Positions 2,870-60,310 are shown, counted from the first letter of the stretch. The stretch is DNA of 64,000 bases from IMGVR_UViG_3300036766_002181:1-64000, one strand, 5' to 3'. The notes: generated by a model not told the origin, from the sequence alone. Program-made: numbers and translations.

Positions 2870-2877
2870 ATATTTAT
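2870..2877 (+). promoter_or_regulatory. Putative late-promoter motif ATATTTAT
   Basis: GATATTTATATG directly before ATG 2882; the same 12-mer precedes the terminase gene. Confidence 0.5.
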
Positions 2878-2881
2878 ATGC

Positions 2882-3424
2882 ATGGCAATAAAAACAAGAA
2901 TCACATCAAAGGGCATAATTCAAGAACATACTTCTGATATTTTATCAGAATTTGATATTGAGGTTAACCAAAAAGAGGGGCAGGCTCTTAGGCGCAGAAC
3001 CCTAGTCATAAGTCATGAAGATTTAACTGCCGATGACACCACCCAAACATTTTCGATGGGCGCGGCGTTCCCGGCGGGGGCGGTGGTTCAAGTCCTCGAT
3101 GTCGATGTAACGGCGGAGATTGTCGGGCTTACTAACCCGCACGTGAGGCTGGGAGTGCTGGGACAGCCGGGCGGCCCTGGCGAGTTTCTTGACTATGTGT
3201 TGGTCACTGACGGCGGCGTATTAGTCCAGCGAAAATCAATGCCGTACGACATTTCCGGGGATCCTCCAGGCAGCTCGAATAATGCTCTTCACGGCAGCAT
3301 CAGCGGCAGAGAGCCGACTGGCACCATCTCCGCCGACAACAACGTCAACAACGCCAGCGCCGGCAGCGTGACGGTGAACATCGTCTACATGCTTGCGGAT
3401 GATGTAACTCAAGACAATGGTTAA
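2882..3424 (+). CDS. Putative virion decoration protein with a GC-rich C-terminal beta-sandwich-like domain
   Basis: N-terminus MAIKTRITSKGII resembles that of 8232..9845; C-terminal FPAGAVV...V.V...VRLGV...GSVTVNIVY pattern resembles capsid cement/decoration folds (by eye). Confidence 0.5.
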   Translation: MAIKTRITSKGIIQEHTSDILSEFDIEVNQKEGQALRRRTLVISHEDLTADDTTQTFSMGAAFPAGAVVQVLDVDVTAEIVGLTNPHVRLGVLGQPGGPGEFLDYVLVTDGGVLVQRKSMPYDISGDPPGSSNNALHGSISGREPTGTISADNNVNNASAGSVTVNIVYMLADDVTQDNG

Positions 3425-3637
3425 TTGTCTTCTATCTCTTTAAAAAATCTATCTAAATTGGCTTCAATATAGCTGTCTATATCAAACGTAGACATGCGGC
3501 GGGGATGTATGGCCATCCCCCCGATAAGATCTCTTTTTGGTTTGGTTCAAACCAAGGTATATACAAATGCTTCCATATGGGCGCATTACACCGTTTTTAT
3601 CAATAGAAATATATAAGTTTCCAGGAACCAATGTCAT
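3421..3637 (-). pseudogene. Frameshifted small L-x-P-G-x-L-Y family gene (not in the ORF track)
   Basis: ATG 3637 gives MTLVPGNLYISIDK...GSICIYLG, which stops at 3482; the +1 frame continues GMAIHPRRMSTFDIDSYIEANLDRFFKEIEDN*, matching the C-terminus of neighbour 3634..3879. Removing one base from the G6 run (3517-3522) restores a 71-aa ORF. Confidence 0.8.
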
Positions 3638-3879
3638 GGTATTTCCTTAAAGGAAAGATTTAGATTATGTGCAGTATAGCTATCTGTTACAAACTCGGAT
3701 ACATACATTGTCTCAACAACAAGCATCCCATGCACAATTCTGTCATGACGTTGATCTTTATAAATTCCAAGATATAGACAAATGCAGCCCTTTGGTCTAT
3801 TAACATAATATCCAAACCTATCAATGGCAACATAGAGATTTCCAGGGATTAATTTTAAATCATTATTATTCATCGCCAT
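3634..3879 (-). CDS. Small hypothetical protein, L-x-P-G-x-L-Y family
   Basis: LKLIPGNLYVAID...GCICLYLG; overlaps both neighbours. Confidence 0.8.
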   Translation of the reverse strand: MAMNNNDLKLIPGNLYVAIDRFGYYVNRPKGCICLYLGIYKDQRHDRIVHGMLVVETMYVSEFVTDSYTAHNLNLSFKEIP

Positions 3880-4129
3880 TTATCTCCTTAAAGTATTTAT
3901 CAAGGTTTTTATTTGTTTGGCTGTTTTCAGCAAACTCAGAGATTTTCTGGGATTGGACAAGTAGCATTCTGTGAACAGATCCCTCGTGAAAGGTTAATTC
4001 AATTGGATTATTGAATAATCCAATATACATACAAACCGTTCCCGGAGATCTTCGAAGCATATAACCATGCCCCGCAAGACCGGGATTGGTGGCAGCATAT
4101 AATTTTCCTGGAATGAGTCTTTTAATCAT
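3866..4129 (-). CDS. Small hypothetical protein, L-x-P-G-x-L-Y family
   Basis: KRLIPGKLYAA...GTVCMYIG...NLDKYFKEI; paralog of the adjacent genes. Confidence 0.8.
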   Translation of the reverse strand: MIKRLIPGKLYAATNPGLAGHGYMLRRSPGTVCMYIGLFNNPIELTFHEGSVHRMLLVQSQKISEFAENSQTNKNLDKYFKEINGDE

Positions 4130-4371
4130 AACACTTTACTGTAAAATTTAGGAATATCCATTGGCGAAACAACCTTACGAAATGATCTGCCCTTGCAACA
4201 GTCATAAAAAACATATACATGCACAAGGTTGTTGAAATTACTAGGGCCTTTCAAAAGGCAAACTATAGTATTTGCGTTAATGCTTATGGTTTTGCCGTCC
4301 ATAGACCAACCATATAACAAATAATGAGTTCGATATAGATCGCCCTTAACAAGGGCCACTGTGTTTGTCAT
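4126..4371 (-). CDS. Small hypothetical protein, L-x-P-G-x-L-Y-like
   Basis: VALVKGDLYRT; 4-nt overlaps with both neighbours. Confidence 0.7.
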   Translation of the reverse strand: MTNTVALVKGDLYRTHYLLYGWSMDGKTISINANTIVCLLKGPSNFNNLVHVYVFYDCCKGRSFRKVVSPMDIPKFYSKVL

Positions 4372-4646
4372 AGTGAAATTATCTTGGCATTGTCAATAAG
4401 ATTTTGTTCTAACCAAGAACCTCTTACAACATAGTATATTTCTTTTTTGCCAATCAAATAAATCTTCCAACAACCATTGTGTTCGGTTGAATCAAACTCC
4501 TTGCCCAAAACAATAAAGGGTTCCTGGTTTCTAAACTTGTATCCTGCCGCCTCAGAATCCACAATTGTATAAATCTCACCAAGCTTAAACTTTATGGGAT
4601 TTGGTTGACTTGCGGGGCCTGTTTCAGGACGAAGAACCAAGGCCAT
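4368..4646 (-). CDS. Small hypothetical protein, related to the same family
   Basis: FKLGEIYTIV...FIVLG; coupled overlap with the downstream gene. Confidence 0.7.
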   Translation of the reverse strand: MALVLRPETGPASQPNPIKFKLGEIYTIVDSEAAGYKFRNQEPFIVLGKEFDSTEHNGCWKIYLIGKKEIYYVVRGSWLEQNLIDNAKIISL

Positions 4647-5664
4647 ATCCCCGTTCCCTTACAATTGCCTTAACCTGTTCAAGATACTCCTCATGAAATG
4701 CCCAGGTCTTTGTTGCAGGATTATAACGACGACCAGAATTGTCGGTAAGATTCTTAAACCTGTTAATCATGCCATACATCGCAGCATCAGGAGCATACCA
4801 GGGACAAAAAACCGTAAACCAGCTTCCAGCACGGGCCCCATAGACAGGAGCCTTGCTTTCAAGCGGCACAGTAAAGGTGGCAATTGGTTCACGACAAGAG
4901 AGAAGACGTTCAGGAGGAGGAGGAGCAGAGGCGGCAACATTGTCTGATAGTCCCTTTGTACGAGCCTCTTCTGCAATGGCCTCTATGTCTCCATCAATGA
5001 AGGGCCAGTAGCGCAAGGCAATCTCAATGAATCTGTCAGCATGCACAACCGAGGCCCTACAGGGCGTCCTGTCGCCACGATACCGGGGAGTGATGATGCC
5101 AGGAATGCTACGACGAAAGGCCCGCCAGCCATCCTTGGAGGACTTGCCAGACAAAACAATGTCGTTTCCTTCAATGGTCAATACGGCAGGAGTCATGCAA
5201 ACATCGCCCTTAAGAACACCGGCAAGGGCAGCATAACCAATGGCTTCGATAATATCGATTGCACGATTCCTAACAATCGTGGAGCAAGGAAAGGAAAGGG
5301 CACGATCAAACCAATCGGCAACAAAGCGCCAATCTCCACCACTAACCATGACACGAGTAATATCAGGATTCCGAGTCTGGGTTCGGGCAAGCTGGTGAAG
5401 AAACTTGATCTTAAGCCCCTCCTCAAATTCTGAGGCAACCTCAGAATGAAAATCTTGTTCAGGATCAAAAGACAAAAGCAGGGCAGCAGCCTTGGTCAGA
5501 TTGGCAGGCATCTGCCGAGCAAAGATTGCATTGTCCTTATGCCTGCAAACTGGACCCACCCCGTTCTCCCTAGAGGCAGCATCCGTCAATTCCTTACGAC
5601 AACGAGAACAGGCCCGGTAAACACTATCAGAAAACCGTCCAGCGGTGTTTTGATGAAAAGTCAT
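4624..5664 (-). CDS. DUF6011-like zinc finger plus C-terminal HARP-like domain protein
   Basis: N-terminal CSRCRKELTDAASRENGVGPVC; C-terminal PWY...INRFKNL...RRYNPATKTWAF resembles HARP domains. Confidence 0.65.
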   Translation of the reverse strand: MTFHQNTAGRFSDSVYRACSRCRKELTDAASRENGVGPVCRHKDNAIFARQMPANLTKAAALLLSFDPEQDFHSEVASEFEEGLKIKFLHQLARTQTRNPDITRVMVSGGDWRFVADWFDRALSFPCSTIVRNRAIDIIEAIGYAALAGVLKGDVCMTPAVLTIEGNDIVLSGKSSKDGWRAFRRSIPGIITPRYRGDRTPCRASVVHADRFIEIALRYWPFIDGDIEAIAEEARTKGLSDNVAASAPPPPERLLSCREPIATFTVPLESKAPVYGARAGSWFTVFCPWYAPDAAMYGMINRFKNLTDNSGRRYNPATKTWAFHEEYLEQVKAIVRERGYGLGSSS

Positions 5665-5668
5665 TATT

Positions 5669-5833
5669 TTAACCTCGGATCAAATAAGCAAGGGTCATAG
5701 AGAAGGCTGCCAGGCCAAGCTATGGGTTGCAAAGGCCGGCAGCAATACCAACGCCAGTGCCAATCGGCAGGGCAATGACAAGTCCAATCATGTCGTCCGG
5801 CAGAATCAGCTTTTTGCGGCTTTGAGTTGCCAT
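5669..5833 (-). pseudogene. 54-codon small membrane protein gene with an in-frame TAG (not in the ORF track)
   Basis: SD-like AGAGGG, ATG 5833, MATQSRKKLILPDDMIGLVIALPIGTGVGIAAGLCNP*LGLAAFSMTLAYLIRG*; TAG at 5720-5722; the final TAA lies 4 nt before the next gene's ATG. Confidence 0.6.
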
Positions 5834-5857
5834 GCATCCCTCTTCTTTCTGTCTCTC

Positions 5858-5885
5858 ATTATAGCAAATTCATTTGATTTGGCAA
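5858..5885 (-). promoter_or_regulatory. sigma70-type promoter with extended -10
   Basis: TTGCCA-N16-TATAAT with TGC before the -10, upstream of the 5833 to 3421 operon. Confidence 0.7.
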
Positions 5886-5936
5886 GATAAATCAGACCAT
5901 TTTATGCAAATAAATCTGGAAAGTCTGGAGAGACTT

Positions 5937-6347
5937 TTAAGGCCAATTTTTACCAGACAAACTGTCAGGACAGCCCTCTTCTTTCTCTTCCAACAACTCC
6001 CGAATTTTCTTATATTCCGCAGCATGGTGTTTTTCCCAGGTTCCCTGAAAGGCAAAGGATCTCCGAAGTGTAAGGGGCTTAAAAACGCCAGAAAGCCTGA
6101 CTCTTGCATCCTTGCAAGGAAAAACTGTAAGCTTTTGTAGGCATGGCCTCTTGTCAAGCCCATGAAACCGGGTCATGCCCTCTGTCTGTCCCAACCAGTC
6201 ACAGGGCTCAAGGGACAGCATGACAAGCATGGTACCAAAGGGAATATGCTCCATTTTGGAAAAGTCATCATTTCGGCCGGGAGGCGTATCAAGGATAACC
6301 CCTTGCCTTTTGGCCACAAACAAAAGTGTTCCAGGTACGTTTAACAT
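5937..6347 (-). CDS. Hypothetical protein
   Basis: 136-aa ORF directly downstream of a consensus promoter; VPGTLLFV start resembles the small PG family. Confidence 0.6.
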   Translation of the reverse strand: MLNVPGTLLFVAKRQGVILDTPPGRNDDFSKMEHIPFGTMLVMLSLEPCDWLGQTEGMTRFHGLDKRPCLQKLTVFPCKDARVRLSGVFKPLTLRRSFAFQGTWEKHHAAEYKKIRELLEEKEEGCPDSLSGKNWP

Positions 6348-6354
6348 GGCAAAG

Positions 6355-6383
6355 AATATAGCATATTCAAATTACTAAGTCAA
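6355..6383 (-). promoter_or_regulatory. sigma70-type promoter, predicted leaderless transcript
   Basis: TTGACT-N17-TATATT with TGC extension; ATG 6347 is 7 nt after the -10. Confidence 0.75.
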
Positions 6384-6513
6384 CAACAAGAAAAATAATA
6401 AAATATAATCGATTTAAGGCTTGACAAGACAAGTCCGTGTCAGGCTACCATTGGCCTGATTGGCTTGGCTCAGAATGGCGCACAGAGGCCGTAACAATGA
6501 AATTTATGAAGAC

Positions 6514-7053
6514 CTAGTGCCTTGTCTTTCGGCGGGTGTTCATTACCCAATCAAACCAGGGAAAGGAAACACACCAATTTTGATTTTGATTTCTTAGACA
6601 ATGATGCTCATAATGCCAGGGCATGAGAAATCCAAACTTATCATTGTTTGCATGGGACAGGGCATGGGCAATATAATAATACCAGGCAATCAGGAGATAG
6701 GCAATTCCAAGATACTTTGAGAAAAACAAGTAGGTAGGCAAGGCAATCAATAGATTTGAACCAAAGACAAGCCATAGCTCTTTTTTGATCATTCTGGAAA
6801 ACCTGCCGGATTTAAGCAATTGTTCATACTCAACATCTACATTGTCTCTTTTGTTTTCCTCTCTTTCTCGGCATCTCTTGTGATGCTCCCAGTGATAGTG
6901 AAAGAAGCTACCTTTTTTTGTGCCCAGCCTATGAAGAACATACTTGTGAAAGAACCATTCAGAGATATTTTGAGAAACAAGGGCAACAACCAATGCCCCC
7001 GAGAACATAATGATTTTATACAAGATCATTAAAGATATAATAAGCAAAGACAT
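6514..7053 (-). CDS. Fatty acid hydroxylase/sterol desaturase superfamily membrane di-iron enzyme
   Basis: His boxes HKYVLH, HWEHH, HALSH, HYEHH, terminal NWCVSFPWFDWVMNT, and hydrophobic segments. Confidence 0.85.
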   Translation of the reverse strand: MSLLIISLMILYKIIMFSGALVVALVSQNISEWFFHKYVLHRLGTKKGSFFHYHWEHHKRCREREENKRDNVDVEYEQLLKSGRFSRMIKKELWLVFGSNLLIALPTYLFFSKYLGIAYLLIAWYYYIAHALSHANNDKFGFLMPWHYEHHCLRNQNQNWCVSFPWFDWVMNTRRKTRH

Positions 7054-7054
7054 T

Positions 7055-7354: not shown

Positions 7355-7384
7355 ATTATTATTATATGATAAAACTTGTTTGGT

Positions 7385-8185: not shown

Positions 8186-8193
8186 AACAAACC

Positions 8194-8222
8194 AACGTAG
8201 CATAGAACTGGTATAAAATCAA
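8194..8222 (-). promoter_or_regulatory. sigma70-type promoter, near-leaderless
   Basis: TTGATT-N17-TACGTT with TGC extension; 8 nt to ATG 8185. Confidence 0.6.
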
Positions 8223-8231
8223 GCCTTGTTA

Positions 8232-9877: not shown

Positions 9878-9885
9878 ATAAATAT
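9878..9885 (-). promoter_or_regulatory. Putative late-promoter motif ATATTTAT
   Basis: In the short intergenic gap, 32 nt upstream of ATG 9845. Confidence 0.45.
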
Positions 9886-10246: not shown

Positions 10247-10250
10247 AAAC

Positions 10251-10900: not shown

Positions 10901-11455
10901 TTATTCTTCCTTTAGTTCGGCCAGCCAATATAAATAGGACCGCCAGGCATCAGGTGTTTTTGGAAAGTCAAAGTTAAATCTAATATAGGCTTCCTCAGAA
11001 GGAATGTTGGGTTTCTTTAAAAGAACCATCCCCGCCTGCTCTGGTGTTTTTTCGCCTTTTATAAAATTGCAACGGCGGCAACTGGATACAATATTGTGCC
11101 AATGGGTTGTTCCTCCCTGAACCTTGGGAACAACATGATCAAAGGTTAGCTCTTTCATGTTTGGCTTTTCACCACAGTACAGGCAAGAAAACTTGTCTCT
11201 CCTAAAAATGTTTAGACGAGAAAACTTTGGTCTAGATCTATAACCAACATGTTTAAGAAGCCTGATTACGGCAGGACACTTCATTGTAAATGAAATGGAA
11301 TTAAGATCAAAATCATCATATTCTTCCAGGATTTCAACCTTGTCAGAAAACCACATACAGATTGCTCTTTGCCAGGTCACAACCTTGAGGGGCTTAAAGT
11401 TAGAATTCAACAGAAGAGTCTGCTTGTGGTTTTCTAAATCTATAGTAGAAGACAT
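10901..11455 (-). CDS. HNH endonuclease (McrA-like)
   Basis: TLLLN..F.PL, IFRRDKFSCLYCG, TFDHVVPKVQGG...WHNIVSSCRRCNFIKG; ATG 11455 preferred. Confidence 0.92.
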   Translation of the reverse strand: MSSTIDLENHKQTLLLNSNFKPLKVVTWQRAICMWFSDKVEILEEYDDFDLNSISFTMKCPAVIRLLKHVGYRSRPKFSRLNIFRRDKFSCLYCGEKPNMKELTFDHVVPKVQGGTTHWHNIVSSCRRCNFIKGEKTPEQAGMVLLKKPNIPSEEAYIRFNFDFPKTPDAWRSYLYWLAELKEE

Positions 11456-12088: not shown

Positions 12089-12631
12089 TTAGGGTAAGAA
12101 AGAGAAGGCTGCCTCTAATGGTTTAATTAGACAGGAAACAAATTTGGCATCAAATCCTTCAATAAGAGGATTTATTTTTAGGGCGGCCTTAAGATCTATG
12201 CTTGGAAGCTGTGGCAGCTTTTTCAGAATGCCAAGAAAAATATCAAACAGGGAAAGAAGAATGCTTAGAACGAAATCTTTGAGGGCCCCGATATTAAACA
12301 ACTTTGGATCTATTGTAATGTCGCCTAGTTTTGCAGTAATTCCACCTATGGAGATTGATATTGCCGGCATGCCCTTGGCCTGCAAATTGAACCCGTCAAG
12401 AATTACGCTTGGCAAATTGGCAATAAGATCTATAATCTTTTTTGGTAACTTTGGACTTTTAAGATCCAAGTCTAGAATAAGGCTTATTGGTCCAAGGGCG
12501 GCACCAATTGCTCCCATAATCACAGGATGGAAGCCCGGATTTCCAATTTCAAAAACAGGAGGATTGATACCAAGACAATCCCCAATTTTTGAACGAGATA
12601 CGAGATCTGCTGGTGTTGGTAAGGCGACCAT
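12089..12631 (-). CDS. Hydrophobic Pro/Leu/Ile-rich hypothetical protein
   Basis: 180-aa ORF co-directional with its neighbours; amphipathic composition. Confidence 0.65.
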   Translation of the reverse strand: MVALPTPADLVSRSKIGDCLGINPPVFEIGNPGFHPVIMGAIGAALGPISLILDLDLKSPKLPKKIIDLIANLPSVILDGFNLQAKGMPAISISIGGITAKLGDITIDPKLFNIGALKDFVLSILLSLFDIFLGILKKLPQLPSIDLKAALKINPLIEGFDAKFVSCLIKPLEAAFSFLP

Positions 12632-18281: not shown

Positions 18282-18289
18282 ATAAATAT
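18282..18289 (-). promoter_or_regulatory. Putative late-promoter motif ATATTTAT
   Basis: GATATTTATATGGGTAATG directly before the terminase start. Confidence 0.5.
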
Positions 18290-18748: not shown

Positions 18749-19213
18749 CTATTTTAAATTAAATATGGGTCTGGCAGATATTGCACGTATTAACAGATAT
18801 TCGTGAAAGGATTTGTGCTTTTTAAGTTTTTCGACATTTTTAATAAGCCTTGATTTTTTCCATCTTTTTTCACAGTGTTCGCAGGCTCCAAGACTTCTAT
18901 ATGACATGCTGTCTTCCATTGTCTTCATTGGATATTCGCAAAGGGGACAAAATAGCGGAGTTCTTGTTTTCTCATAATCCTTTGGGGCGATTATAATAAT
19001 TTTCCCGCCTTCCAAAGACGACACCTGTCCGCCGCCGTCAACATCAGAAGAGAGGACTGTCCTTTCAGAAGATTGCTGTTCATCAACGAATATTGCCGGC
19101 ACCAAGGGTTTCAATGTTCGTTTAATGATTCCTTTATATCTTTTTAATCTGAGCTTTTTGCTTCTAAGATGTAGTTTTTTTCGTAGTTTCTTAAACTTGG
19201 TTGTATTGGCCAT
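18749..19213 (-). CDS. Basic hypothetical protein with a CxxC/CxxC zinc site
   Basis: FCPLC...ACEHC; Lys-rich N-terminus. Confidence 0.7.
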   Translation of the reverse strand: MANTTKFKKLRKKLHLRSKKLRLKRYKGIIKRTLKPLVPAIFVDEQQSSERTVLSSDVDGGGQVSSLEGGKIIIIAPKDYEKTRTPLFCPLCEYPMKTMEDSMSYRSLGACEHCEKRWKKSRLIKNVEKLKKHKSFHEYLLIRAISARPIFNLK

Positions 19214-28234: not shown

Positions 28235-28241
28235 TAAATAT
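28235..28241 (-). promoter_or_regulatory. Putative late-promoter motif ATATTTA
   Basis: In the intergenic gap, 21 nt upstream of ATG 28213. Confidence 0.4.
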
Positions 28242-30236: not shown

Positions 30237-30243
30237 TAAATAT
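30237..30243 (-). promoter_or_regulatory. Putative late-promoter motif ATATTTA(GCAA)
   Basis: Intergenic; the 11-mer ATATTTAGCAA also occurs upstream of 43911. Confidence 0.45.
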
Positions 30244-35939: not shown

Positions 35940-38417
35940 TTAGATAACTATCGGGGCAGCAGCTTCTTCGGGCCCTCTATTAAAATCATAAAATACTGGT
36001 ATTACGACGTACTTTAATTGGCCATGTTCACCATTGTCCAAAGTGTCAATAAACTTAAACTCGTTTGTTTCGCCTATGGCATGTGTTTTGCCAACAATCG
36101 TTCTCATTCCATTTATTTCCAAAAGAATCAAAAAATGATCAATTTTAGTAGAATTCCCTATAACCTTCCATTTGATAAGAATTGATTTTTCATTTAAGGA
36201 TCTGGCCCTTACTTCGCCTAGAACAGGAATGGATTTATTGAACTTAACATCCAGATATTTGATATCAGAAACCGCTCCCATTGTAAAAATAGAATTGGCG
36301 TGATTTCTCAATAGAGATTCATCTGACACAATGTTTCCTTCAGAAAGCGTAATTGGATGAAGAAACTTAGATGGTTTTAGTGTATAGGTTTGATTAAGAC
36401 CAGCTTGTACTTCTCTGGTTACAGTCGAAATCATCGACTCCGCAGTTCTGGCATAGGCGGTAATTGCGTATTTATAAGACGAGCCCGATCTCAGAGAAAG
36501 AACATTTTTTACAGCTCCCAAAGTCTTATCTGAAAAGCTCGTTCCATCTATTACTCCAAAATCTTCTATATCGCCAGACAACAGGTTAAACCTAAGAACT
36601 CTTATAAAGAATAGACTCTGTAGAAGCTCCTTGTTGTCTTTTATGTCGTCATCGTATTCCGTAATACCCTGAGAGGCTAAAACAGACTTAACAATATCCA
36701 AATCCCCAAGGGCAACGTTCTTAACAATATCAAAGGTTACATCTGGATTTTCTGAACCATTTTCATTTATTATCAGATTTTTAATCTCAATAGAGACGAC
36801 ATTTTTTATTATAGGAGTATATTCCACATGCAAGACGTTTCCGGCCGAGGACTTCGAGCCGTCTGCATATAAAAGCTCGCACCTATACTCGTAAATTCTT
36901 CTGGGTTTAACCAGGGTATCCACCACCTCCAAGGGCCGCTCTGTTGCAGATTTTAACAGAATTGTCTTTCCGCCAATTAGATCAAAACTCGATTGCCCAA
37001 TTGTCAAGTCTCTTTTTAAGATATCTAAACCAATTGGTCCATTTGGAAGATTATCAACAAATAGAACAACTCCATTTTCTCTAATTTCGTAAGATAGAGT
37101 CAAATAGCTTTGTCTTTTTAGATAGTTTCCACCAAGGGCCAATTTTTTATTGTTTCCACCAGAGATAACTGTTCCAGAAAAACATCCACCAAGCTCTCCA
37201 TCGGTTCCGACAGGAATGACCCTATAGAGCGTAGAGATGGCACTTGAGCCAAAATCTTCATATCTTGTTTCAGGATCTCCTGCCGAGGCATTAAGGGAGG
37301 CTACAAACTCATAGGGTGTGTCTAAAGAAAAAACACCTGATTTAATCTTCTTTCTATAAAGATCTAGCTTATGGGCATTTAAGTCTTCTTGCTTTAATTT
37401 GATTATATTTTTTCCAAACTCAGCAAAGGAAGCGCCTGAAATTCTTGGTGGCCTATTTGGTATTTTAAAGGCAGAAGAAATTTCTGCATGATTAACCAGC
37501 AGCTTTAAAATCTGAACCGTAAGACCTTGAAGATTCTTAAGCCTTAATTCTATATCAAAAACCGTTTGTCCTCTAAGCGTATCAACAGGAATTAGCAAGT
37601 CTTCGGATATTTCTATGAAAAGAGTCTGCTCTTTTACCGGAGCATTAATATAATGGATTGATTCATTTAAGTCTTGTTGACTCGTTGGTGCCTTCCCCGT
37701 CAGAAGAGATTTTCTTAGCACAACAGAATACTTGTCTTCTCGATCGGGTGTTGGTGCCCCTGATATGACTCCTGCAAATTGTTTCTTGGCAGGGACAATT
37801 GTATTACTTAAACTCCCGACAAATTCGCCAGGATCTATTCCTTCTAAAAACAAAAGATCCAAGGCAGCCTTTTGTAGGTCTTTGTCATCAGAACTTACTT
37901 CGTTTTCTTGTATTTTGTTATTGTTGATTTCAAAAACAGAGGCCACTCCATCTATTTCATTTATAGGCACGGCCTTAACGGTTATGGTTGTATTTGTTCC
38001 GGCGAGACTGGCCACGGAAGAATTAAATCCAGACTGTCTTGCCAGAGTCGAGGCCGCTTCATTCGAAATCTTTTTGGTTATATCGGAATTCTTTCTAAGA
38101 ATTAAATCATTTTCTTTTTTGTTTATTATGGCCTGTTCATTTTTTGCTCTATTAAGAATGTTTTCAACGACTTGCTCAGGTTGCTGTGAGGCTTCTTTAT
38201 CAAATATCTTGGCTTCTGTTTCTCTTGAGTTGCTCTTGAACACGGCAATTTCAACTTGTGTTCCGCCAAGATTTTTATCAAATATTTTTGCCAAGTTAGC
38301 CAAATACTTTAATCGATAATGAAATCTATGGCCTTTATTATCAATAAAAGATAGGCCAATAAAATTGGCCGGATCAACACTAATGGCATCTGAAGTTTTT
38401 GCCAAAACAACCTTCAT
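35940..38417 (-). CDS. Structural protein with Fn3/Ig-like domains
   Basis: YRVIPV, IYEYRCELLY, SYKYAITAY, LKYVVIPV strand patterns. Confidence 0.7.
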   Translation of the reverse strand: MKVVLAKTSDAISVDPANFIGLSFIDNKGHRFHYRLKYLANLAKIFDKNLGGTQVEIAVFKSNSRETEAKIFDKEASQQPEQVVENILNRAKNEQAIINKKENDLILRKNSDITKKISNEAASTLARQSGFNSSVASLAGTNTTITVKAVPINEIDGVASVFEINNNKIQENEVSSDDKDLQKAALDLLFLEGIDPGEFVGSLSNTIVPAKKQFAGVISGAPTPDREDKYSVVLRKSLLTGKAPTSQQDLNESIHYINAPVKEQTLFIEISEDLLIPVDTLRGQTVFDIELRLKNLQGLTVQILKLLVNHAEISSAFKIPNRPPRISGASFAEFGKNIIKLKQEDLNAHKLDLYRKKIKSGVFSLDTPYEFVASLNASAGDPETRYEDFGSSAISTLYRVIPVGTDGELGGCFSGTVISGGNNKKLALGGNYLKRQSYLTLSYEIRENGVVLFVDNLPNGPIGLDILKRDLTIGQSSFDLIGGKTILLKSATERPLEVVDTLVKPRRIYEYRCELLYADGSKSSAGNVLHVEYTPIIKNVVSIEIKNLIINENGSENPDVTFDIVKNVALGDLDIVKSVLASQGITEYDDDIKDNKELLQSLFFIRVLRFNLLSGDIEDFGVIDGTSFSDKTLGAVKNVLSLRSGSSYKYAITAYARTAESMISTVTREVQAGLNQTYTLKPSKFLHPITLSEGNIVSDESLLRNHANSIFTMGAVSDIKYLDVKFNKSIPVLGEVRARSLNEKSILIKWKVIGNSTKIDHFLILLEINGMRTIVGKTHAIGETNEFKFIDTLDNGEHGQLKYVVIPVFYDFNRGPEEAAAPIVI

Positions 38418-43916: not shown

Positions 43917-43923
43917 TAAATAT
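43917..43923 (-). promoter_or_regulatory. Putative late-promoter motif ATATTTA(GCAA)
   Basis: TATATTTAGCAACATG directly before the start of 43018..43911. Confidence 0.5.
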
Positions 43924-51271: not shown

Positions 51272-51337
51272 ATATATGATTAATGTTAATTAGAAATCTC
51301 TCAGATATTTGAATATAAGAAATTGGCGAATAGTTGA

Positions 51338-54788: not shown

Positions 54789-54803
54789 TTAAATATTGCC
54801 GCA
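54789..54803 (-). promoter_or_regulatory. Putative late-promoter element TGCGGCAATATTTAA
   Basis: Exact 15-mer also at 1828-1842 (+); lies 8 nt before ATG 54780. Confidence 0.55.
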
Positions 54804-54843: not shown

Positions 54844-55953
54844 CTAGTGGAGTTCTTTGGACTTTTTAATGTCTTTGTAGTGTTTTTTCAAACTTGACAA
54901 ACAAGTCGAAAGTTGCTTCCCGCTCAGGCCGCTGAGTTCTTTAATATATATCAAAATTGCCCTTTTATTAAGCAAATCAATATTGTCCAAATTGTCTGCA
55001 ATTTGTTTTATTGCACCTACACACAGAATCTCATTCTCTGTTTTAACCTTATGCGTAAGCTCGCCAATAACCTCATGAAGAAGTTTGTTTTGTTCGACCT
55101 TTGCAAGCATGTCCTCATAAGAAGGCACGACATTAAATGATTCAAACTGGTCTATATCATTTTTGGAAAAGGATTCTCTGTCGTCTGCGCTTATATAGGT
55201 CTTAATTCTTTTAACGTTTTGTTTGGATTTTATGGTTAACCAGTTTTTGCCAACAACATTAAAATAGGAAAAGGCCTTTGTTCCCTTTGTTGCATCAAAC
55301 TTATTAACCGTTGTATAGAGAAACTCAAGACATTCTGCCTTAAGATTTTTCTTTGATTCATAAAGAACCTTAAAGCCATAAACGTTTATTAGATTTTCTA
55401 CAAGAGAATCAAAGGCAGGGAGAATGTGCTTGACATATAACTCTTCTTTTTTTGCAGGGGTTTCTGCTTTTTGGTATTCAACTATATGCTCCTGGGTTTG
55501 CATATCGAAATAATTGTTTGACTTGGTGCCCGGCTTTCTTTTTATTATTCTTCTTTCTTTTTTATTATTGGCCACGCCCACCAGGACAGTTGGGCCTGCT
55601 GGCACAACGACGCTGTGTGCCATCGATAAGGATGCCTCTATGACTGGTAGTGGCGGCGTGGATTGTGCCTTGGAAGAAGCTTTAATTTTTTTGTTAGTAA
55701 TAGTGACAGTAGGCTTGCTTGTTTTTGTTTCTTGCCTAACAAGCTTAAAAGAAGAAGAGGGAGAGGAATGTGCTCTCTTTTTTGTGGCTTGTTTTTTGCT
55801 TGATAACCTTTTTGTTAATCTCTTTTTAACGGCCTTGATCTGATGATGGTGGCGGCGGCGGCGTTGTCTTGATTGATGCCTCTTGCCTTTTCCGGCACTT
55901 CTGGTGCCAGTCGTGTTGCTGTTGCCTTTTTTATTATTGGTTTTTTTCAACAC
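54844..55953 (-). CDS. RNA polymerase sigma-like factor with a long basic N-terminal extension; start uncertain (GTG 55953 or ATG 55623)
   Basis: Region 2-like ECLEFLYTTVNKFDATKGTKAFSYFNVVGKNWL; C-terminal helix-turn-helix-like KRAILIYIKELSGLSGKQLS. Confidence 0.7.
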   Translation of the reverse strand: MLKKTNNKKGNSNTTGTRSAGKGKRHQSRQRRRRHHHQIKAVKKRLTKRLSSKKQATKKRAHSSPSSSFKLVRQETKTSKPTVTITNKKIKASSKAQSTPPLPVIEASLSMAHSVVVPAGPTVLVGVANNKKERRIIKRKPGTKSNNYFDMQTQEHIVEYQKAETPAKKEELYVKHILPAFDSLVENLINVYGFKVLYESKKNLKAECLEFLYTTVNKFDATKGTKAFSYFNVVGKNWLTIKSKQNVKRIKTYISADDRESFSKNDIDQFESFNVVPSYEDMLAKVEQNKLLHEVIGELTHKVKTENEILCVGAIKQIADNLDNIDLLNKRAILIYIKELSGLSGKQLSTCLSSLKKHYKDIKKSKELH

Positions 55954-56427: not shown

Positions 56428-57633
56428 CTATTCTTTGGCAATCAATTCATTAAAGAAATCATTATATTGTTTTTCAATTGCTTCTGGGCTATGAGAAATG
56501 AGAAGTTTCTCTTTTAATTCTTTTGCCCATCCTGCCGGTACAGAAGGGCTTTCAAAGAATTTTCTCATTTTTCTCTTGGCATCTGCCTCTACCGGATAGG
56601 CCCATCTTGCATCTTTAATAAAGATACTGTTGTCAATTCTACTTTGATGAATTGGTTTTAATTCGTAATCAACCTTAATATACTTTCCCTGCCTAAGAAA
56701 TTCTGTCTGGGCAGACCAATCTGTAACGATTACAGGCAAGCCACAGGTTGCTGCCTCTAGAGTTGGAAGTGAAAAACCTTCTCCGCGAGTAAGGTTTAAA
56801 AGGGCCTTTATCTTTGGATTGGTGTATAAGCTTACGACCTCTGTATCTTCCATGTGGCCATGAAGAAGATATACTTTTGCCTTGCTTTGAATCAATTTCT
56901 GACACTCTGCCACAATGGCGGCCAGGGTTCTCACAGAGGCGGCCTTGTCTGCCGTTGTGTTACGACCGAAGTTTGTTTTAACAACAAGTCCAACGGAAGG
57001 ATTATCCTTAAACTCTTCTAGGAACCACTTGATGGTATATGCAATATTTTTTCTATCATTTTCAGGATTGTTTCCTGTAAATTGAGAAACTACCAAAAAA
57101 TTAAAATCTGCCTCTGTTAAAAGGGATGTTAATTCTTGATTTTCTTTGGTTTCTGAGCCTGCTCGACAAGCCTCAAACCAGGATTCAGGAATAACCTTTA
57201 GAGGCACTTTAATTTGGCCAGAATTTTCAAGAGTTCTTTTTATGTGTTCTGAAGGCACAAGAACGGCACTCATTCTATTAATGCAATCAATCCACACGGG
57301 ATTGCATCTGTCTGTTTCAACCGCAGCAGTCAGACCAATATTGGCCTTTGCCAAAAATGGATCCCATTCATTTGGAAGCTGCAATTGAAAACTATAATCA
57401 TATATCGCATCTTTATTTTTGTTGCTATTTTGAATAATCTGACCAATTAAGCCATTACAGGCCTTTGGATCGACGAACCAGGGAGTTGTTCCCCAGGGAA
57501 CCGGATCAAAGACAACCTGAATATCTCGCTCTTGATTTTCTTGTCTATTTAAAAACCATCTAGCAATCTGTCGGGCGTGAACCCCATAACCTGCACCTGT
57601 GAGCACTGGTGCTCTGAAAATTATAGTTTTCAC
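56428..57633 (-). CDS. GT-B (GT4-like) glycosyltransferase
   Basis: RGEGFSLPTLEAATCGLPVIVT (EX7E motif). Confidence 0.92.
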   Translation of the reverse strand: MKTIIFRAPVLTGAGYGVHARQIARWFLNRQENQERDIQVVFDPVPWGTTPWFVDPKACNGLIGQIIQNSNKNKDAIYDYSFQLQLPNEWDPFLAKANIGLTAAVETDRCNPVWIDCINRMSAVLVPSEHIKRTLENSGQIKVPLKVIPESWFEACRAGSETKENQELTSLLTEADFNFLVVSQFTGNNPENDRKNIAYTIKWFLEEFKDNPSVGLVVKTNFGRNTTADKAASVRTLAAIVAECQKLIQSKAKVYLLHGHMEDTEVVSLYTNPKIKALLNLTRGEGFSLPTLEAATCGLPVIVTDWSAQTEFLRQGKYIKVDYELKPIHQSRIDNSIFIKDARWAYPVEADAKRKMRKFFESPSVPAGWAKELKEKLLISHSPEAIEKQYNDFFNELIAKE

Positions 57634-59036
57634 TTATGTTGCTCCCCTTCTTCGATGGCCTTTAGATTTATGGGAGTCAAAGTCCAATTGCCTCTCCCGG
57701 CCTTTTTCTTTTCTTTAAAGTCACCAATGCAGCCATCAAGAGTCTTGTCCCAATCTTTAATCATATTGTCATAGTTGAAGGCATAGTCGGCATAGTCTAT
57801 AACCTTGTTTTTCATTTTTTCTTTTTCTTCAAAAGTCATTTCAAACAGCCTCAAAAGTCCATTGGCAACGTCTTCGTCTGCTGCAAAGTCCTCGTAAATG
57901 TAAGGCACCAATTGCGAACCCACGAGAGATCTCTTAACAGGCTTAAGGGCAACTCCATTTTCAGAGCCATCTCTTGGATCAATTGCCTTGCTTGTTTCTC
58001 CGCCCGTGCAAAGAGCAACTACTGGCTTTCCACACTGTAATGCTATCAGGCCCTGAAGTCCATAACCCTCTGCCTTAGAAATGTTAATTGTTGCATCAAC
58101 CGAGTTTTGTAAAAGATTCATTTTGTCAAACTGAAGCTTCTCTGTAGAGAACCAAACGGTATCCTGAAGACCAAGAAGTTCGGTTATTGCAAATAGATTT
58201 GGGCCTTCTTTATCCTTTGGGTCTGTATGCATAATCAACAATGCGTTGTTATGTCCGTGCTTTGCCTGAAGCTTTTCTAAAAACTTCTTCCAGCATACAA
58301 GCAAGTCTCCTGGCATTTTTCTATGAGCATTTCTATTAACCCACAAAACCTTAAACCAATCTTTTTTATCTTCACCAAAATTTTCTGCCTTTGTCCTATC
58401 AAGATCTTCTGGTGGAATTGGAAAATAAACATTTTTTGGAAAGGTATGAGGAATATAGTGAGTTTTATCTGGAAAGTTTGGCTTAATAAGATCATAGGTT
58501 TTCTGTGCCAAGCAATTGATTAAATCAGTTGCCTCATACCAGGGATTATTAAATGCAGGATAGGGATCGTTATCCCAGACATGCCAATATGCAATAGGAC
58601 AAACCTGATGAATTTCGTCTTCCATTTCCCACAGCCAAACAAACTGTCTGGGATCTGTAAATATAACAATTGCATCTGGTCTTTCTGTAACCAACAGGCT
58701 TCTTAAAAGCTCCTTGGACCCAAAGCCATCAACAGGCTTTATTATAAAATCAGGATTGATGGCAACCGTATCATATTTTTCATGTTTTATTGCCCCGCCC
58801 AAACAACGAAAGGTATATCTTCCTGTTTTGATTAAGCCCTCAATAAGAAACCTAGACTGTACGCCAACCCCAGAAACACAAACCTGCATATCGGATATAA
58901 AGATGATTTTGTGTTTTTTTATTGGTCTAATAAACAAGTCATCATCATCATTGTCTTTTAAGATTGTATGCTGAGTATTTGATGTAATCAAAAGAGGTAA
59001 CTCGCCGCCGCTGTCTTCTGCCGGTGATATGGTCAT
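57630..59036 (-). CDS. GT-B (GT4-like) glycosyltransferase, degenerate EX7E
   Basis: SGVGVQ, VNRNAHRK, AEGYGLQGLIALQCGKPVV. Confidence 0.88.
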   Translation of the reverse strand: MTISPAEDSGGELPLLITSNTQHTILKDNDDDDLFIRPIKKHKIIFISDMQVCVSGVGVQSRFLIEGLIKTGRYTFRCLGGAIKHEKYDTVAINPDFIIKPVDGFGSKELLRSLLVTERPDAIVIFTDPRQFVWLWEMEDEIHQVCPIAYWHVWDNDPYPAFNNPWYEATDLINCLAQKTYDLIKPNFPDKTHYIPHTFPKNVYFPIPPEDLDRTKAENFGEDKKDWFKVLWVNRNAHRKMPGDLLVCWKKFLEKLQAKHGHNNALLIMHTDPKDKEGPNLFAITELLGLQDTVWFSTEKLQFDKMNLLQNSVDATINISKAEGYGLQGLIALQCGKPVVALCTGGETSKAIDPRDGSENGVALKPVKRSLVGSQLVPYIYEDFAADEDVANGLLRLFEMTFEEKEKMKNKVIDYADYAFNYDNMIKDWDKTLDGCIGDFKEKKKAGRGNWTLTPINLKAIEEGEQHK

Positions 59037-59091
59037 TATTTATCTCTCGCCCTTTATAATATGCTTTTTAAACTTGAAATTGTTTGCCTTT

Positions 59092-60246
59092 TTACCAGCG
59101 CTGCTCCCAAAAAGAATCTCCTGAGAGATTGTTTAATCTCTCCTTCTCTAAAACCTCTCGATAAATTCTTTCTATCTTGTTAATATTGGTTTCCAAGGAA
59201 AGATATTCGTTATATCTTTTTTTGGCATTAACACTTAATTCTTCTCTATACTCTGGGCTGTTTTTTAGCCTTAACATTTCAGCAATATAGTCTCCTTCTG
59301 TTTCCACAACATTACCGGCATTGCCAATAGTCTCTTTATGGCCCATTGCCGGGGCTACGTGGCTGATTACGGGCAGGCCGTGGTACATGGCCTCTGCTAT
59401 GGCCAACCCCATTGTCTCGCCGTCAGAACGCCCGTGGGCGAAGACATCGAGGGTTTCTAGAAAATCATTTTGGTCCTTCTCGTCGCCGGAATGAGAAATA
59501 TGATGAAAATTCTTTAAACCAAGCTCTTGTGCCTGTTTTTGATATTTGTCTCCCCCGCCCATTAAGACAAAGTGGGTATCTTCATTTTCGATTTTGCCAT
59601 AAGCCTGCAATGGAACAGGAGACATAATTCCATCATCTGCCCTTTGGTGCATCCCATAAACAAAGTCTGTTTTTGATATACCAAGTTTTTCTCTAAAACT
59701 TGATGCCTTATCAATTTCAGGAACCTCAGAACATATGGGAACAATTTCTATAAGACTAGAATTGCCGCCTGCCCTTACCCAAGAGTCTGCCTGCCACTGG
59801 CTTATATGAATTGATTTCTTTATAAGGGGATTTTTGTCTGCCATTCCTGGCAGGGTAATAATATCAATAATTGGAGTTTTCTTTATTTCGGTAAAGGGAT
59901 ATTCGGGATGACCAGCACGGCCTGTTTGGATTATGTCGTAATCCTCTTCTTTAAAAAGCGACCAAAAATTTGTATTAATCCAAGGATGGTGAGGCTTTGT
60001 TATATCCTTGGCTTCCAAATCAAACTTAACAAGTTTAACATTAGAATTTTCAACATAGGCCTTTCTGAAGGAATCCGTGTCAGGATGTTTCCAACTTGAT
60101 CCAACATAGGGGACAGAATCGCAATAAAAACAGGTTACATCGAAGTCCTCTTTTTTCTTGGCTAGATTTACGGCAATAGTCTGAAGAAACCTTTCTGTGC
60201 CGCCAGTGGCAAGAGCACAAAATTTCACTACTGCAACTTTAATCAT
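59092..60246 (-). CDS. GT-B (GT4-like) glycosyltransferase
   Basis: GGTER, DVFAH...GETMGLAIAEAMYHGLPVI. Confidence 0.92.
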   Translation of the reverse strand: MIKVAVVKFCALATGGTERFLQTIAVNLAKKKEDFDVTCFYCDSVPYVGSSWKHPDTDSFRKAYVENSNVKLVKFDLEAKDITKPHHPWINTNFWSLFKEEDYDIIQTGRAGHPEYPFTEIKKTPIIDIITLPGMADKNPLIKKSIHISQWQADSWVRAGGNSSLIEIVPICSEVPEIDKASSFREKLGISKTDFVYGMHQRADDGIMSPVPLQAYGKIENEDTHFVLMGGGDKYQKQAQELGLKNFHHISHSGDEKDQNDFLETLDVFAHGRSDGETMGLAIAEAMYHGLPVISHVAPAMGHKETIGNAGNVVETEGDYIAEMLRLKNSPEYREELSVNAKKRYNEYLSLETNINKIERIYREVLEKERLNNLSGDSFWEQRW

Positions 60247-60302
60247 TGTTGGCCACCATCACCAAATTGCTGAATAAAATCAATTTTGTATAACTTATAT
60301 CT

Positions 60303-60310
60303 ATATTTAT
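60303..60310 (+). promoter_or_regulatory. Putative late-promoter motif ATATTTAT
   Basis: 4 nt before ATG 60315 of the sulfotransferase. Confidence 0.45.

What the first reader, a model, noticed from the sequence alone, without database searches (positions are those of the whole stretch)
2870..60310. Recurrent ATATTTA motif upstream of late-type genes, candidate target of the phage sigma factor
Seen: ATATTTA(T/A/G) lies 0-35 nt before the starts at 1823, 1848, 2882, 9845, 18274 (terL), 28213, 30205, 43911, 54780 (cca) and 60315 (sulfotransferase), with longer exact sharing between pairs (GATATTTATATG, ATATTTAGCAA, TGCGGCAATATTTAA). None has an obvious -35. Established: T4 late promoters are a single AT-rich -10-type element (TATAAATA) read by gp55. 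Inference: a distinct late promoter read by the sigma-like protein at 54844, defining a regulon that links structural genes with cca and the sulfotransferase. Caveat: an AT-rich 7-mer is common by chance in this genome.
Basis: partly seen in the sequence, partly recalled or inferred. Interest (0 to 1): 0.65.

Follow-up and report, generated by a model that had tools for sequence, protein, structure and literature searches.

The report
Phage-specific promoter box ATANTTA, often leaderless
A short DNA word, (A/C)TANTTA, sits just upstream of many genes of this large uncultivated phage and its relatives and is avoided elsewhere, as expected of a phage-specific promoter without a -35 element, often so close to the ATG that the mRNA would have no leader.

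Summary
ATATTTA is not over-represented in the window (17 copies, 21.5 expected). Its placement is not random: 10-11 copies lie within 45 nt upstream of an ORF start, in gene orientation, against 1.4 expected. In the whole 244.7-kb record it is the 7-mer most concentrated upstream of genes.

The element is (A/C)-T-A-N-T-T-A-(A/T), a single box with no -35. Inside ORFs it is 4-5 fold depleted on both strands. It stands before TerL, the major capsid, tail tube, both sheath and baseplate genes, and is nearly absent from two clusters of small genes. The same words top the list in 83 related contigs and in a complete 305-kb relative, and are kept before orthologous genes.

In the relatives the box ends exactly 5-6 nt before an ATG. 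With T4 geometry this puts the transcription start on the A, giving leaderless mRNAs.

The ORF at 54844-55623 does fold as a sigma factor (T4 gp55 Z 10.6). It has no Pfam or PHROG match and no significant profile match to gp55. A second, canonical sigma-70-family gene lies at 203.9 kb. No RNA data exist.

The parts
1835..1841 (+). ATATTTA box, 6 nt before ATG 1848. It overlaps the box of the divergent gene in the palindrome ATATTTAAATAT.
1840..1846 (-). ATATTTA box, 16 nt before ATG 1823
2870..2876 (+). ATATTTA box, 5 nt before ATG 2882 (180-aa ORF); leaderless geometry
9879..9885 (-). ATATTTA box, 33 nt before ATG 9845 (537-aa ORF)
10931..10937 (-). CTATTTA box, 33 nt before ATG 10897 (137-aa membrane-protein PHROG)
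12124..12130 (-). CTAATTA variant, 43 nt before start 12080
18283..18289 (-). ATATTTA box, 8 nt before ATG 18274 of the intein-bearing large terminase. The TerL orthologue of the complete relative G001 carries ATATTTA 4 nt before its start.
18760..18766 (-). It lies 14 nt before GTG 18745, or 23 nt before ATG 18736 with an AGAGGG Shine-Dalgarno-like stretch in between.
28235..28241 (-). ATATTTA box, 21 nt before ATG 28213 (816-aa Laminin_G_3 protein, fibre-like)
30237..30243 (-). ATATTTA box, 31 nt before start 30205. The 237-aa product has a homologue in the tail/baseplate module of Mel-JY01.
35945..35951 (-). ATAGTTA variant, 10 nt before ATG 35934 (1243-aa ORF)
43917..43923 (-). ATATTTA box, 5 nt before ATG 43911 (297-aa ORF); leaderless geometry
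51287..51293 (-). CTAATTA variant, 15 nt before ATG 51271 (gp25-like baseplate wedge subunit)
54790..54796 (-). ATATTTA box, 9 nt before ATG 54780 (CCA-adding enzyme / poly(A) polymerase family)
60303..60309 (+). ATATTTA box, 5 nt before ATG 60315 (sulfotransferase); leaderless geometry
54844..55623 (-). Gene of the 259-aa sigma-fold protein (P0002), the candidate reader of the box. The 396-codon ORF that reaches 56034 only adds a low-complexity extension.

Best explanation
(A/C)TANTTA(A/T) is the -10-type element of a phage-specific promoter class. It is a single 8-bp box with no -35, and it is read by host RNA polymerase carrying a phage-encoded specificity factor. The most likely factor is the divergent sigma-fold protein encoded at 54844-55623.

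The class drives the virion genes: terminase, capsid, tube, sheaths, baseplate and fibre-like proteins. It also drives a few others, such as cca and the sulfotransferase. It most likely acts late in infection, while TTGACA-N17-TAnnnT promoters serve clusters of small, early-type genes.

Many boxes end 5-12 nt before the ATG (exactly 5-6 nt in relatives). With T4 geometry (box at -13 to -6), transcription would then start on or within a few bases of the A of the ATG. These mRNAs would be leaderless. The most abundant structural genes instead keep 30-50 nt leaders with a Shine-Dalgarno-like AGGA.

Shown: the motif, its orientation, its spacing, its avoidance elsewhere, its conservation in relatives, and the sigma fold.
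For: 1. Position and orientation. ATATTTA is the 7-mer most concentrated upstream of genes in the genome (z 14.9), and CTATTTA is second. Counts are 23 sense against 5 antisense, with 6.0 +/- 2.3 in shuffles. Of 128 copies of [AC]TANTTA, 54 lie within 60 nt upstream in sense orientation.

2. Specificity. Single-base variants keep only 0-5% of their copies upstream, except a C at position 1 and any base at position 4. Information is confined to 8 positions and there is no -35.

3. Avoidance. Synonymous-codon shuffles give, inside ORFs, 28 against 155.5 on the sense strand and 27 against 111.3 on the antisense strand. The control with the last base changed has a ratio of 0.89. The complete relative G001 repeats this: 37 against 107 and 20 against 84.6. 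Avoidance on both strands points to a signal in DNA, not in RNA.

4. Gene classes. The box stands before TerL, the capsid gene (ATAATTA), tube (ATACTTA), sheath 1 (ATAGTTA), sheath 2 (CTATTTA), the gp25-like gene and others. There are 21 sites in the 80-140 kb structural region, against 0-1 in the small-gene clusters at 60-80 and 200-220 kb. The strict box shares no intergenic gap with a sigma-70-like promoter (29 against 17 gaps); with wider upstream windows one gene has both.

5. Conservation. In 83 contigs that encode a P0002 homologue, ATATTTA ranks first (57 upstream in sense orientation, 15 antisense, 276 in all). ATAATTA, ATAGTTA and ATACTTA rank 5, 7 and 8. In G001 the top words are CTACTTA, ATAGTTA and ATATTTA. 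Orthologous genes share the box: 9 of 82 pairs have it in both genomes, odds ratio 6.9, p 0.003.

6. Spacing. In relatives the distance to the start is 5 nt in 39 cases, 6 nt in 20 and 7 nt in 10, out of 221. Of the 92 starts at 4-9 nt, 88 are ATG. Control words give flat distributions. Without any annotation, 27 of 128 copies in this genome are followed at 5-12 nt by an ATG that opens an ORF of at least 60 codons. The T4 late box lies at -13 to -6 and also has no -35 (PMC2988020). A -10 element directly next to the ORF marks leaderless genes in Deinococcus (PMC4007540, PMC12340547).

7. The factor. The P0002 model has pLDDT 80. All 50 best Foldseek matches are sigma factors. T4 gp55 (7d7c_F) gives Z 10.6 over 120 residues, and sigma-2 domains superpose at 2.4-2.8 A over about 96 residues. 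No RNA polymerase beta or T7-type polymerase domain was found in this record or in two near-complete relatives.
Against: - No transcript 5' ends or expression data exist. The only runs that hold this DNA are sediment DNA metagenomes.
- A second, canonical sigma-70-family gene (203911-204957) lies in the same record and in complete relatives. Co-occurrence therefore cannot single out P0002.
- In G001 the P0002 orthologue itself has ATATTTA 45 nt upstream. That would fit another factor reading the box, or autoregulation.
- P0002 seems to carry a sigma-4-like C-terminal helix-turn-helix, yet no -35 is conserved.
- P0002 has no Pfam or PHROG hit, and the profile comparison with gp55 is not significant.
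- Mel-JY01 has a distant P0002 homologue (26-33% identity) and does not show the motif.
- In this genome the spacing is broader (4-15 nt, mode 8) than in relatives. Many leaders would be 1-6 nt rather than zero.
- Some motif-bearing genes are small ORFs of unknown function in regions that look early. PHROG annotation of the motif-bearing genes was almost blank.
Confidence: 0.6

Rival explanations
1. The element is the same promoter, but it is read by the other phage sigma, the Sigma70_r2-bearing 348-aa protein at 203911-204957. That gene is itself behind a host-type TTGACA promoter. Alternatively the host sigma reads the box after retargeting by a phage factor. P0002 would then be a member of the regulon, or would read another class of promoters.
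For: - It is a true sigma-70-family protein by sequence.
- It is expressed from a sigma-70-like promoter, as an early regulator should be.
- It is present in the complete relatives that also show the motif.
- The P0002 orthologue of G001 has the box upstream.
- Mel-JY01 lacks both this sigma (no hit) and the motif.
Against: - Its region 2 resembles primary sigmas (SigA, RpoD), which read TAnnnT with a T at -7. The box has an A where T-7 would fall, and it has no -35.
- A canonical sigma fits the TTGACA/TAnnnT class better.
- Promoters without a -35 are the hallmark of gp55-type factors, and P0002 matches gp55 in fold.
Confidence: 0.22
2. The word acts in RNA, not DNA. AUANUUA next to the start codon would be a translation-initiation enhancer, the binding site of a RegA-like translational regulator, or a processing site that frees cistrons.
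For: - The box lies 4-15 nt before the start codon, where ribosome-binding signals lie.
- Shine-Dalgarno use is low in this genome: 22% of genes, against 12.5% in a control window.
- It occurs only in the sense orientation.
Against: - It is depleted equally on the antisense strand of ORFs, which an RNA signal would not require.
- The most highly expressed structural genes carry it 31-50 nt upstream, with a separate AGGA next to the ATG.
- ATG starts are nearly exclusive at 4-9 nt spacing, as leaderless translation requires.
- The word has no complementarity to the 3' end of 16S rRNA (from general knowledge, not tested here).
Confidence: 0.08
3. The signal is a by-product of composition. AT-rich intergenic DNA before genes would contain such words by chance.
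For: - The total count in the window is at or below chance.
- Upstream regions are 68% A+T.
Against: - Shuffles of the upstream regions themselves give 6.0 +/- 2.3 against 23 observed.
- The sense to antisense ratio is 23:5.
- One-base neighbours of equal composition are not concentrated upstream.
- The result is repeated in 83 independent contigs and in a complete relative.
- Orthologous genes keep the box, and the spacing peaks sharply at 5-6 nt.
Confidence: 0.02
4. The box is a promoter of the phage-specific class, but it is not late. It could be a middle or constitutive class.
For: - The box also stands before cca, a sulfotransferase, a membrane protein and small ORFs in the 150-230 kb region.
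- A primase and a helicase lie downstream of the box at 28235, on the same strand, without promoters of their own.
- No timing data exist.
Against: - Every identifiable major virion gene has the box.
- It is nearly absent from the dense small-gene clusters.
- It never shares a gap with host-type promoters.
Confidence: 0.25

Closest known systems
Bacteriophage T4 late promoters (TATAAATA, read by gp55 with gp33 and the gp45 sliding clamp)
   Same: - A single AT-rich 8-bp box with no -35.
- Some tens of copies per genome (about 50 in T4; 54 upstream copies here).
- Found on both strands, before virion genes.
- The phage has a T4-type large terminase, capsid, sheath, tube and baseplate genes.
- The candidate factor superposes on gp55, Z 10.6.
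- The geometry fits a box at -13 to -6 (PMC2988020).
   Different: - The sequence differs: (A/C)TANTTA. TATAAATA is not enriched (4 sense against 9 antisense; ranks 752-1603 in relatives).
- The factor is 259 aa with an extra C-terminal helix-turn-helix-like domain, and it has no significant sequence match to gp55.
- No gp45 or clamp-loader (gp44/62) homologue was found, though this record is only about 57% complete; gp33 was not searched for.
- Most boxes abut the ATG, so many transcripts would be leaderless. That is not the rule in T4.
Leaderless genes with the -10 element next to the ORF (Deinococcus-Thermus, Actinobacteria)
   Same: - A -10-type element ends 5-7 nt before the start codon.
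- The start codon is almost always ATG.
- There is no room for a Shine-Dalgarno sequence (PMC4007540, PMC12340547).
   Different: - Here the element belongs to a phage-specific class rather than to the host's housekeeping TAnnnT.
- It has no -35.
- It coexists with leadered versions before the most abundant virion genes.
Other phage-encoded sigma systems (SPO1 gp28 and gp33/34; phiEco32 gp36)
   Same: A phage-encoded sigma-fold protein redirects host RNA polymerase to a phage-specific consensus.
   Different: From my own knowledge, not tested here: those sigmas are recognisable sigma-70-family members, and the SPO1 ones use bipartite -35/-10 promoters. P0002 matches no Pfam or PHROG model, and its putative promoters have no -35.

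Membership tests
T4-type late promoter | A single -10-region box of about 8 bp, with no conserved -35 | tested here: met
   Information is confined to 8 positions among 55 sites of this genome and 215 sites of relatives. Nothing is conserved from -45 to -1.
T4-type late promoter | Consensus TATAAATA | tested here: not met
   TATAAATA occurs 4 times in sense and 9 times in antisense orientation upstream of genes. TATAAAT and ATAAATA are not enriched in relatives. The consensus here is (A/C)TANTTA(A/T).
T4-type late promoter | Read by a gp55 homologue | tested here: inconclusive
   The fold matches gp55: 7d7c_F, Z 10.6, rmsd 4.4 A over 120 of 137 residues. The hhalign probability is below 1%, tblastn with gp55 finds nothing, and there is no PHROG or Pfam hit. 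Binding to the box was not tested.
T4-type late promoter | Activation by the sliding clamp (gp45) and co-activator gp33, coupled to replication | not testable with these tools
   There is no gp45-slide_C hit and no tblastn hit for gp45 or gp44/62. The record is only about 57% complete. gp33 was not searched for.
T4-type late promoter | Late, replication-dependent expression, with the transcription start about 6 nt after the box | not testable with these tools
   No RNA run holds this sequence. Supporting only: the sixth base after the box is a purine-rich position (A 55% in this genome, A+G 69% in relatives), but this partly reflects ATG starts 5 nt after the box.
Sigma-70 family (for the protein at 54844-55623) | Sigma-2 domain fold | tested here: met
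   All 50 best Foldseek matches are sigma factors. Sigma-2 domains superpose at 2.4-2.8 A over 95-98 residues, Z about 9.
Sigma-70 family (for the protein at 54844-55623) | Match to the Sigma70_r2 or r4 sequence models | tested here: not met
   No Pfam hit even at E = 10 and no PDB sequence hit at E = 10. By eye, a block KFD-x3-G-x-K-x-F-S-Y resembles region 2.2.
Leaderless-gene promoters (-10 element next to the ORF) | The -10 element ends 5-7 nt before an ATG, with no Shine-Dalgarno sequence | tested here: met
   In relatives the distance is 5 nt in 39 cases, 6 nt in 20 and 7 nt in 10, out of 221; 88 of 92 starts are ATG; none of 112 has a Shine-Dalgarno-like sequence. In this genome 8 sites lie at 5-7 nt and 18 at 8-12 nt.
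Leaderless-gene promoters (-10 element next to the ORF) | Transcript 5' end on the start codon | not testable with these tools
   No RNA data.
Bacteroidota housekeeping promoter (TTTG ... TAnnTTTG) | A -7 element TAnnTTTG with a -33 TTTG | tested here: not met
   The box is TANTTA. ATATTTG is not concentrated upstream: 1 of 116 copies. No upstream TTTG is conserved. The genome does show TTGACA-type -35 elements, 13 in sense and 1 in antisense orientation.

The most novel reading that the evidence does not exclude
A whole clade of uncultivated large phages encodes a previously unrecognised sigma family: about 1000 homologues of P0002 in contigs up to 500 kb, none with a Pfam domain. In this reading the family reads an 8-bp, -35-less box, (A/C)TANTTA. 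These phages would express much of their late programme as leaderless mRNAs that start on the A of the ATG. The system would be gp55-like, with a new specificity and a sigma-4-like domain, and perhaps without dependence on a sliding clamp.
Probability: 0.4. Interest if true: 0.7.

Novelty: new variant of a known kind. Interest (0 to 1): 0.6.

Why it matters
If correct, this gives a directly testable promoter code for a large group of environmental jumbo phages that have no cultured member. It would allow:
- sorting their mostly unannotated genes into temporal classes from sequence alone;
- fixing start codons, since the box followed by 5-6 nt and an ATG marks the true start;
- assigning a function to a sigma-fold family of about 1000 members with no Pfam domain.

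It would also extend the T4 idea of late promoters without a -35 to a different consensus. And it would show large-scale use of leaderless mRNAs by a phage, which bears on how such phages translate their genes in hosts that make little use of Shine-Dalgarno sequences.

Tried and rejected
- PHROG scans of 30 motif-bearing genes gave almost nothing: one peptidase, one membrane protein, a weak portal fragment and hits to three families of unknown function. Functional classes therefore come from tblastn against Mel-JY01 and from Pfam and PHROG hits in the window.
- A home-made EM motif search drifted to a degenerate T-rich pattern and was discarded. Exhaustive word statistics were used instead.
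- RNA evidence: the look-up of sequencing runs returned only two sediment DNA runs. Read laying was not used, because contigs of DNA runs cannot show transcript ends.
- Microcystis phage Mel-JY01 has a distant P0002 homologue but does not show the motif. Its top words belong to a repeated leader of a family of small paralogous genes.
- The loci first taken from relatives (L001-L004) had too few sites to judge one by one. Pooling 83 loci resolved this.
- Terminator-like hairpins in window 1-20000 are not above chance: 20 against 17.5. No terminator-then-promoter pattern could be claimed.
- T4 gp55, gp45, gp44, gp62, regA and rpbA find nothing significant by tblastn in this record. The Pfam model gp45-slide_C finds nothing either.
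- Models for RNA polymerase beta and T7-type polymerase find nothing. The T7 model also matched none of the control genomes, so that negative result is weak.
- Literature searches found no earlier description of an ATATTTA or ATANTTA phage promoter. The library is incomplete, so this is not proof of novelty.
- I considered that the box is a T4-like ATAAATA read on the opposite strand, since the reverse complement of ATATTTAT is ATAAATAT. I rejected this because of the gene-oriented bias and because the A, C and G forms at position 4 do not fit.

Full report
**Setting**

The window is the first 64 kb of a single 244,715-bp virus record with 38.9% G+C. CheckV rates the record about 57% complete. 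It is a large myovirus distantly related to T4:
- a T4-type large terminase interrupted by two Hint/LAGLIDADG inserts (14231-18274);
- gp6-like and gp25-like baseplate genes;
- outside the window, a T4-like capsid gene, a tail tube, two sheath paralogues and a portal.

The nearest phages on record are Microcystis phage Mel-JY01, an uncultured 484-kb phage and the Flavobacterium 'immuto' phages, at about 40% TerL identity. The only sequencing runs that hold this DNA are sediment metagenomes. No RNA run holds it.

One more site exists at 18760-18766.

The word is not over-represented in the window: 17 copies against 21.5 expected. Its placement is far from random:
- In the window, 10 sense copies lie in the 45 nt before ORF starts, against 1.4 expected and 2 antisense copies.
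- In the whole record, 23 of 50 copies are upstream in sense orientation and 5 antisense. Shuffles of the upstream regions give 6.0 +/- 2.3.
- ATATTTA is the 7-mer most concentrated upstream of genes in the genome (z 14.9), and CTATTTA is second.

**Refining the motif**

Scanning all single-base variants shows that only two positions are free. The first base may be A or C. The fourth base may be any base, with T most common. All other changes abolish the upstream concentration. The base after the box is A or T, sometimes G, almost never C.

The consensus is therefore (A/C)-T-A-N-T-T-A-(A/T). Of 128 copies of [AC]TANTTA, 54 lie within 60 nt upstream of a start in sense orientation. No other position between -45 and +25 carries information, so there is no -35. 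The same holds for 215 sites in relatives.

The variants matter. The capsid gene carries ATAATTA, the tube ATACTTA, sheath 1 ATAGTTA and sheath 2 CTATTTA. These lie 31-50 nt upstream, with an AGGA-type Shine-Dalgarno-like sequence next to the ATG.

**Avoidance elsewhere**

I shuffled synonymous codons within each ORF, leaving out the last 60 nt of each ORF.
- [AC]TANTTA is found 28 times on the sense strand of ORFs against 155.5 expected, and 27 times on the antisense strand against 111.3 expected.
- The control with the last base changed has a ratio of 0.89.

Depletion of similar strength on both strands is what a double-stranded DNA signal such as a promoter predicts. An RNA signal would not predict it.

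**Two promoter classes**

TTGACA is also concentrated upstream: 13 copies in sense and 1 in antisense orientation.
- Sigma-70-like TTGAC[AT]-N15-19-TAnnnT sites occupy 17 intergenic gaps. The box (in the form [AC]TANTTA followed by A, T or G) occupies 29. No gap has both; with wider upstream windows one gene has both.
- The box is frequent in the structural regions: 13 sites in 0-60 kb and 21 in 80-140 kb.
- It is nearly absent from two dense clusters of small genes at 60-80 kb and 200-220 kb, with 1 of 38 and 0 of 42 genes.
- Genes with the box are larger than average, median 231 aa against 140 aa.

This fits temporal classes, but it is indirect. The box also precedes cca (54780), the sulfotransferase (60315), a membrane protein and several small ORFs.

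**Conservation**

The protein at 54844-55623 has 957 relatives in metagenomic contigs up to 508 kb. None has a Pfam domain on record.
- I took 80 viral contigs and 3 metagenome loci that encode such a relative (42-68% identity in the viral contigs). The unbiased ranking again puts ATATTTA first: 57 upstream in sense orientation, 15 antisense, 276 in all, z 15.7. ATAATTA, ATAGTTA and ATACTTA rank fifth, seventh and eighth. T4's TATAAAT is not enriched.
- In a complete 305-kb relative with terminal repeats (G001) the top words are CTACTTA, ATAGTTA and ATATTTA. Coding-region depletion is repeated there.
- Among 82 reciprocal-best gene pairs, 9 carry the box in both genomes, including TerL and sheath 2 (odds ratio 6.9, p 0.003). 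The free position or the spacing often differs between the two.
- The capsid gene of G001 has ATAGTTA 33 nt upstream.
- Mel-JY01, whose homologue is only 26-33% identical, does not show the motif.

**Spacing and leaderless mRNAs**

In the relatives, the distance from the last A of the box to the start codon is 5 nt in 39 cases, 6 nt in 20 and 7 nt in 10, out of 221. Of the 92 starts at 4-9 nt, 88 are ATG. None of the 112 sites at 4-9 nt (relatives and this genome together) has a Shine-Dalgarno-like sequence. Control words give flat distributions. A second group at 15-22 nt has Shine-Dalgarno-like sequences in 40% of cases.

In this genome the peak is broader: 4-15 nt, with a mode at 8. Without using any annotation, 27 of 128 copies are followed at 5-12 nt by an ATG that opens an ORF of at least 60 codons.

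The T4 late box lies at -13 to -6 (PMC2988020). With that geometry a spacing of 5 nt puts +1 on the A of the ATG. The same arrangement marks leaderless genes in Deinococcus (PMC4007540, PMC12340547). I therefore read the sites at 2870, 43917 and 60303 (5 nt) and 1835 (6 nt) as promoters of leaderless mRNAs. Those at 18283 (TerL, 8 nt), 54790 (cca, 9 nt) and 35945 (10 nt) would give leaders of a few bases. This is inference: no 5' ends are available.

**The sigma-like protein**

The 396-codon ORF is over-extended. Its first 137 codons encode a low-complexity Lys/Arg/Ser-rich run. Gene callers and homologues start at 55623, giving 259 aa.

Sequence methods fail: no hit in PHROG, Pfam or the PDB sequences. 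A model built on 40 homologues has pLDDT 80. It matches only sigma factors among the best 50 Foldseek rows. With VIA-align, T4 gp55 gives Z 10.6 over 120 of 137 residues, and sigma-2 domains superpose at 2.4-2.8 A. These Z values are below the level at which helical folds can be trusted on Z alone. What counts is that every top match is a sigma factor.

A profile comparison with gp55 is not significant, with probability below 1%. It does align a KFD..G.K..S.Y block that looks like region 2.2. The last two helices look like a sigma-4.2 helix-turn-helix, which gp55 lacks.

The sigma fold is therefore supported. Membership of the gp55 family is not established.

**Who reads the box?**

The record holds a second sigma gene at 203911-204957. 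It has a true Sigma70_r2 match and similarity to SigA and RpoD region 2. It lies behind a host-type promoter. Homologues exist in the complete relatives as well. Co-occurrence therefore cannot separate the two candidates.

I favour P0002, for three reasons:
- A sigma close to primary sigmas should read TAnnnT with a -35, which fits the TTGACA class.
- Promoters without a -35 are the hallmark of gp55-type factors.
- The motif is found wherever P0002 homologues of 42% identity or more were sampled.

Against this, the P0002 orthologue of G001 carries the box itself, and Mel-JY01 lacks both the second sigma and the motif.

No phage RNA polymerase was detected. No T4 clamp, clamp-loader or gp55 homologue was found, but this record is incomplete; gp33 was not searched for.

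**Verdict**

The promoter reading is well supported by sequence statistics and comparative genomics. The system works like T4 late promoters but has a different consensus and a different, unclassified sigma-fold factor. It also has an arrangement next to the start codon that implies widespread leaderless transcripts. I rate it a new variant of a known kind.

Noticed in passing
genome 203911-204957 (+), outside the window (L098:1219-2265): A second phage sigma factor of 348 aa, with a true Sigma70_r2 match and similarity to SigA/RpoD region 2. A TTGACA-type promoter precedes it. Homologues are present in complete relatives.
   Followed up: partly
window 14231-18274 (-): The large terminase is 1347 aa because of two Hint/intein inserts, one with a LAGLIDADG domain. 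The portal homologue outside the window (139629-146714) is 2361 aa and may be interrupted in the same way.
   Followed up: no
window 55624-56034 (-): An A-rich stretch of about 400 nt lies in frame upstream of the sigma-like gene. It encodes a Lys/Arg/Ser/His-rich low-complexity run. In relatives the 158-aa upstream gene abuts the sigma gene directly, so this looks like an insertion or an N-terminal extension of unknown meaning.
   Followed up: no
window 1835-1846: The palindrome ATATTTAAATAT forms two overlapping boxes that point to the divergent genes starting at 1848 (+) and 1823 (-). Only one polymerase could occupy the site at a time.
   Followed up: partly
whole genome, coding regions: Other words are absent from ORFs against codon-shuffle expectation: AGAGACC/GAGACCA (0 against 21 and 17; contains GAGACC, the complement of GGTCTC) and AGGACCT (0 against 13.6). 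This looks like avoidance of restriction sites.
   Followed up: no
genome 105646-108624 and 108677-111727 (-): Two adjacent tail-sheath paralogues of about 1000 aa each, both similar to the single sheath gene of Mel-JY01. Both are also present in the complete relative G001.
   Followed up: no
window 56428-61019 and related loci L001, L003, L004: A cluster of glycosyltransferase, methyltransferase, sulfotransferase and sugar-nucleotide genes lies next to the sigma-like gene in this phage. In the three relatives examined it lies in the same place.
   Followed up: no
related loci L048-L097: In the more distant relatives another word, AAGCACT, is the one most concentrated upstream of genes (30 of 146 copies, 3 antisense). 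It may mark a further promoter or leader class.
   Followed up: no
Mel-JY01 (L014-L017), e.g. record 68.8-69.9 kb and 129.4-131.4 kb: A repeated leader of about 50 nt stands before a family of small genes. It contains TTAGAGA, then AACAACCTAACAGGAACACTACG directly before the ATG. This explains that genome's top upstream words.
   Followed up: partly
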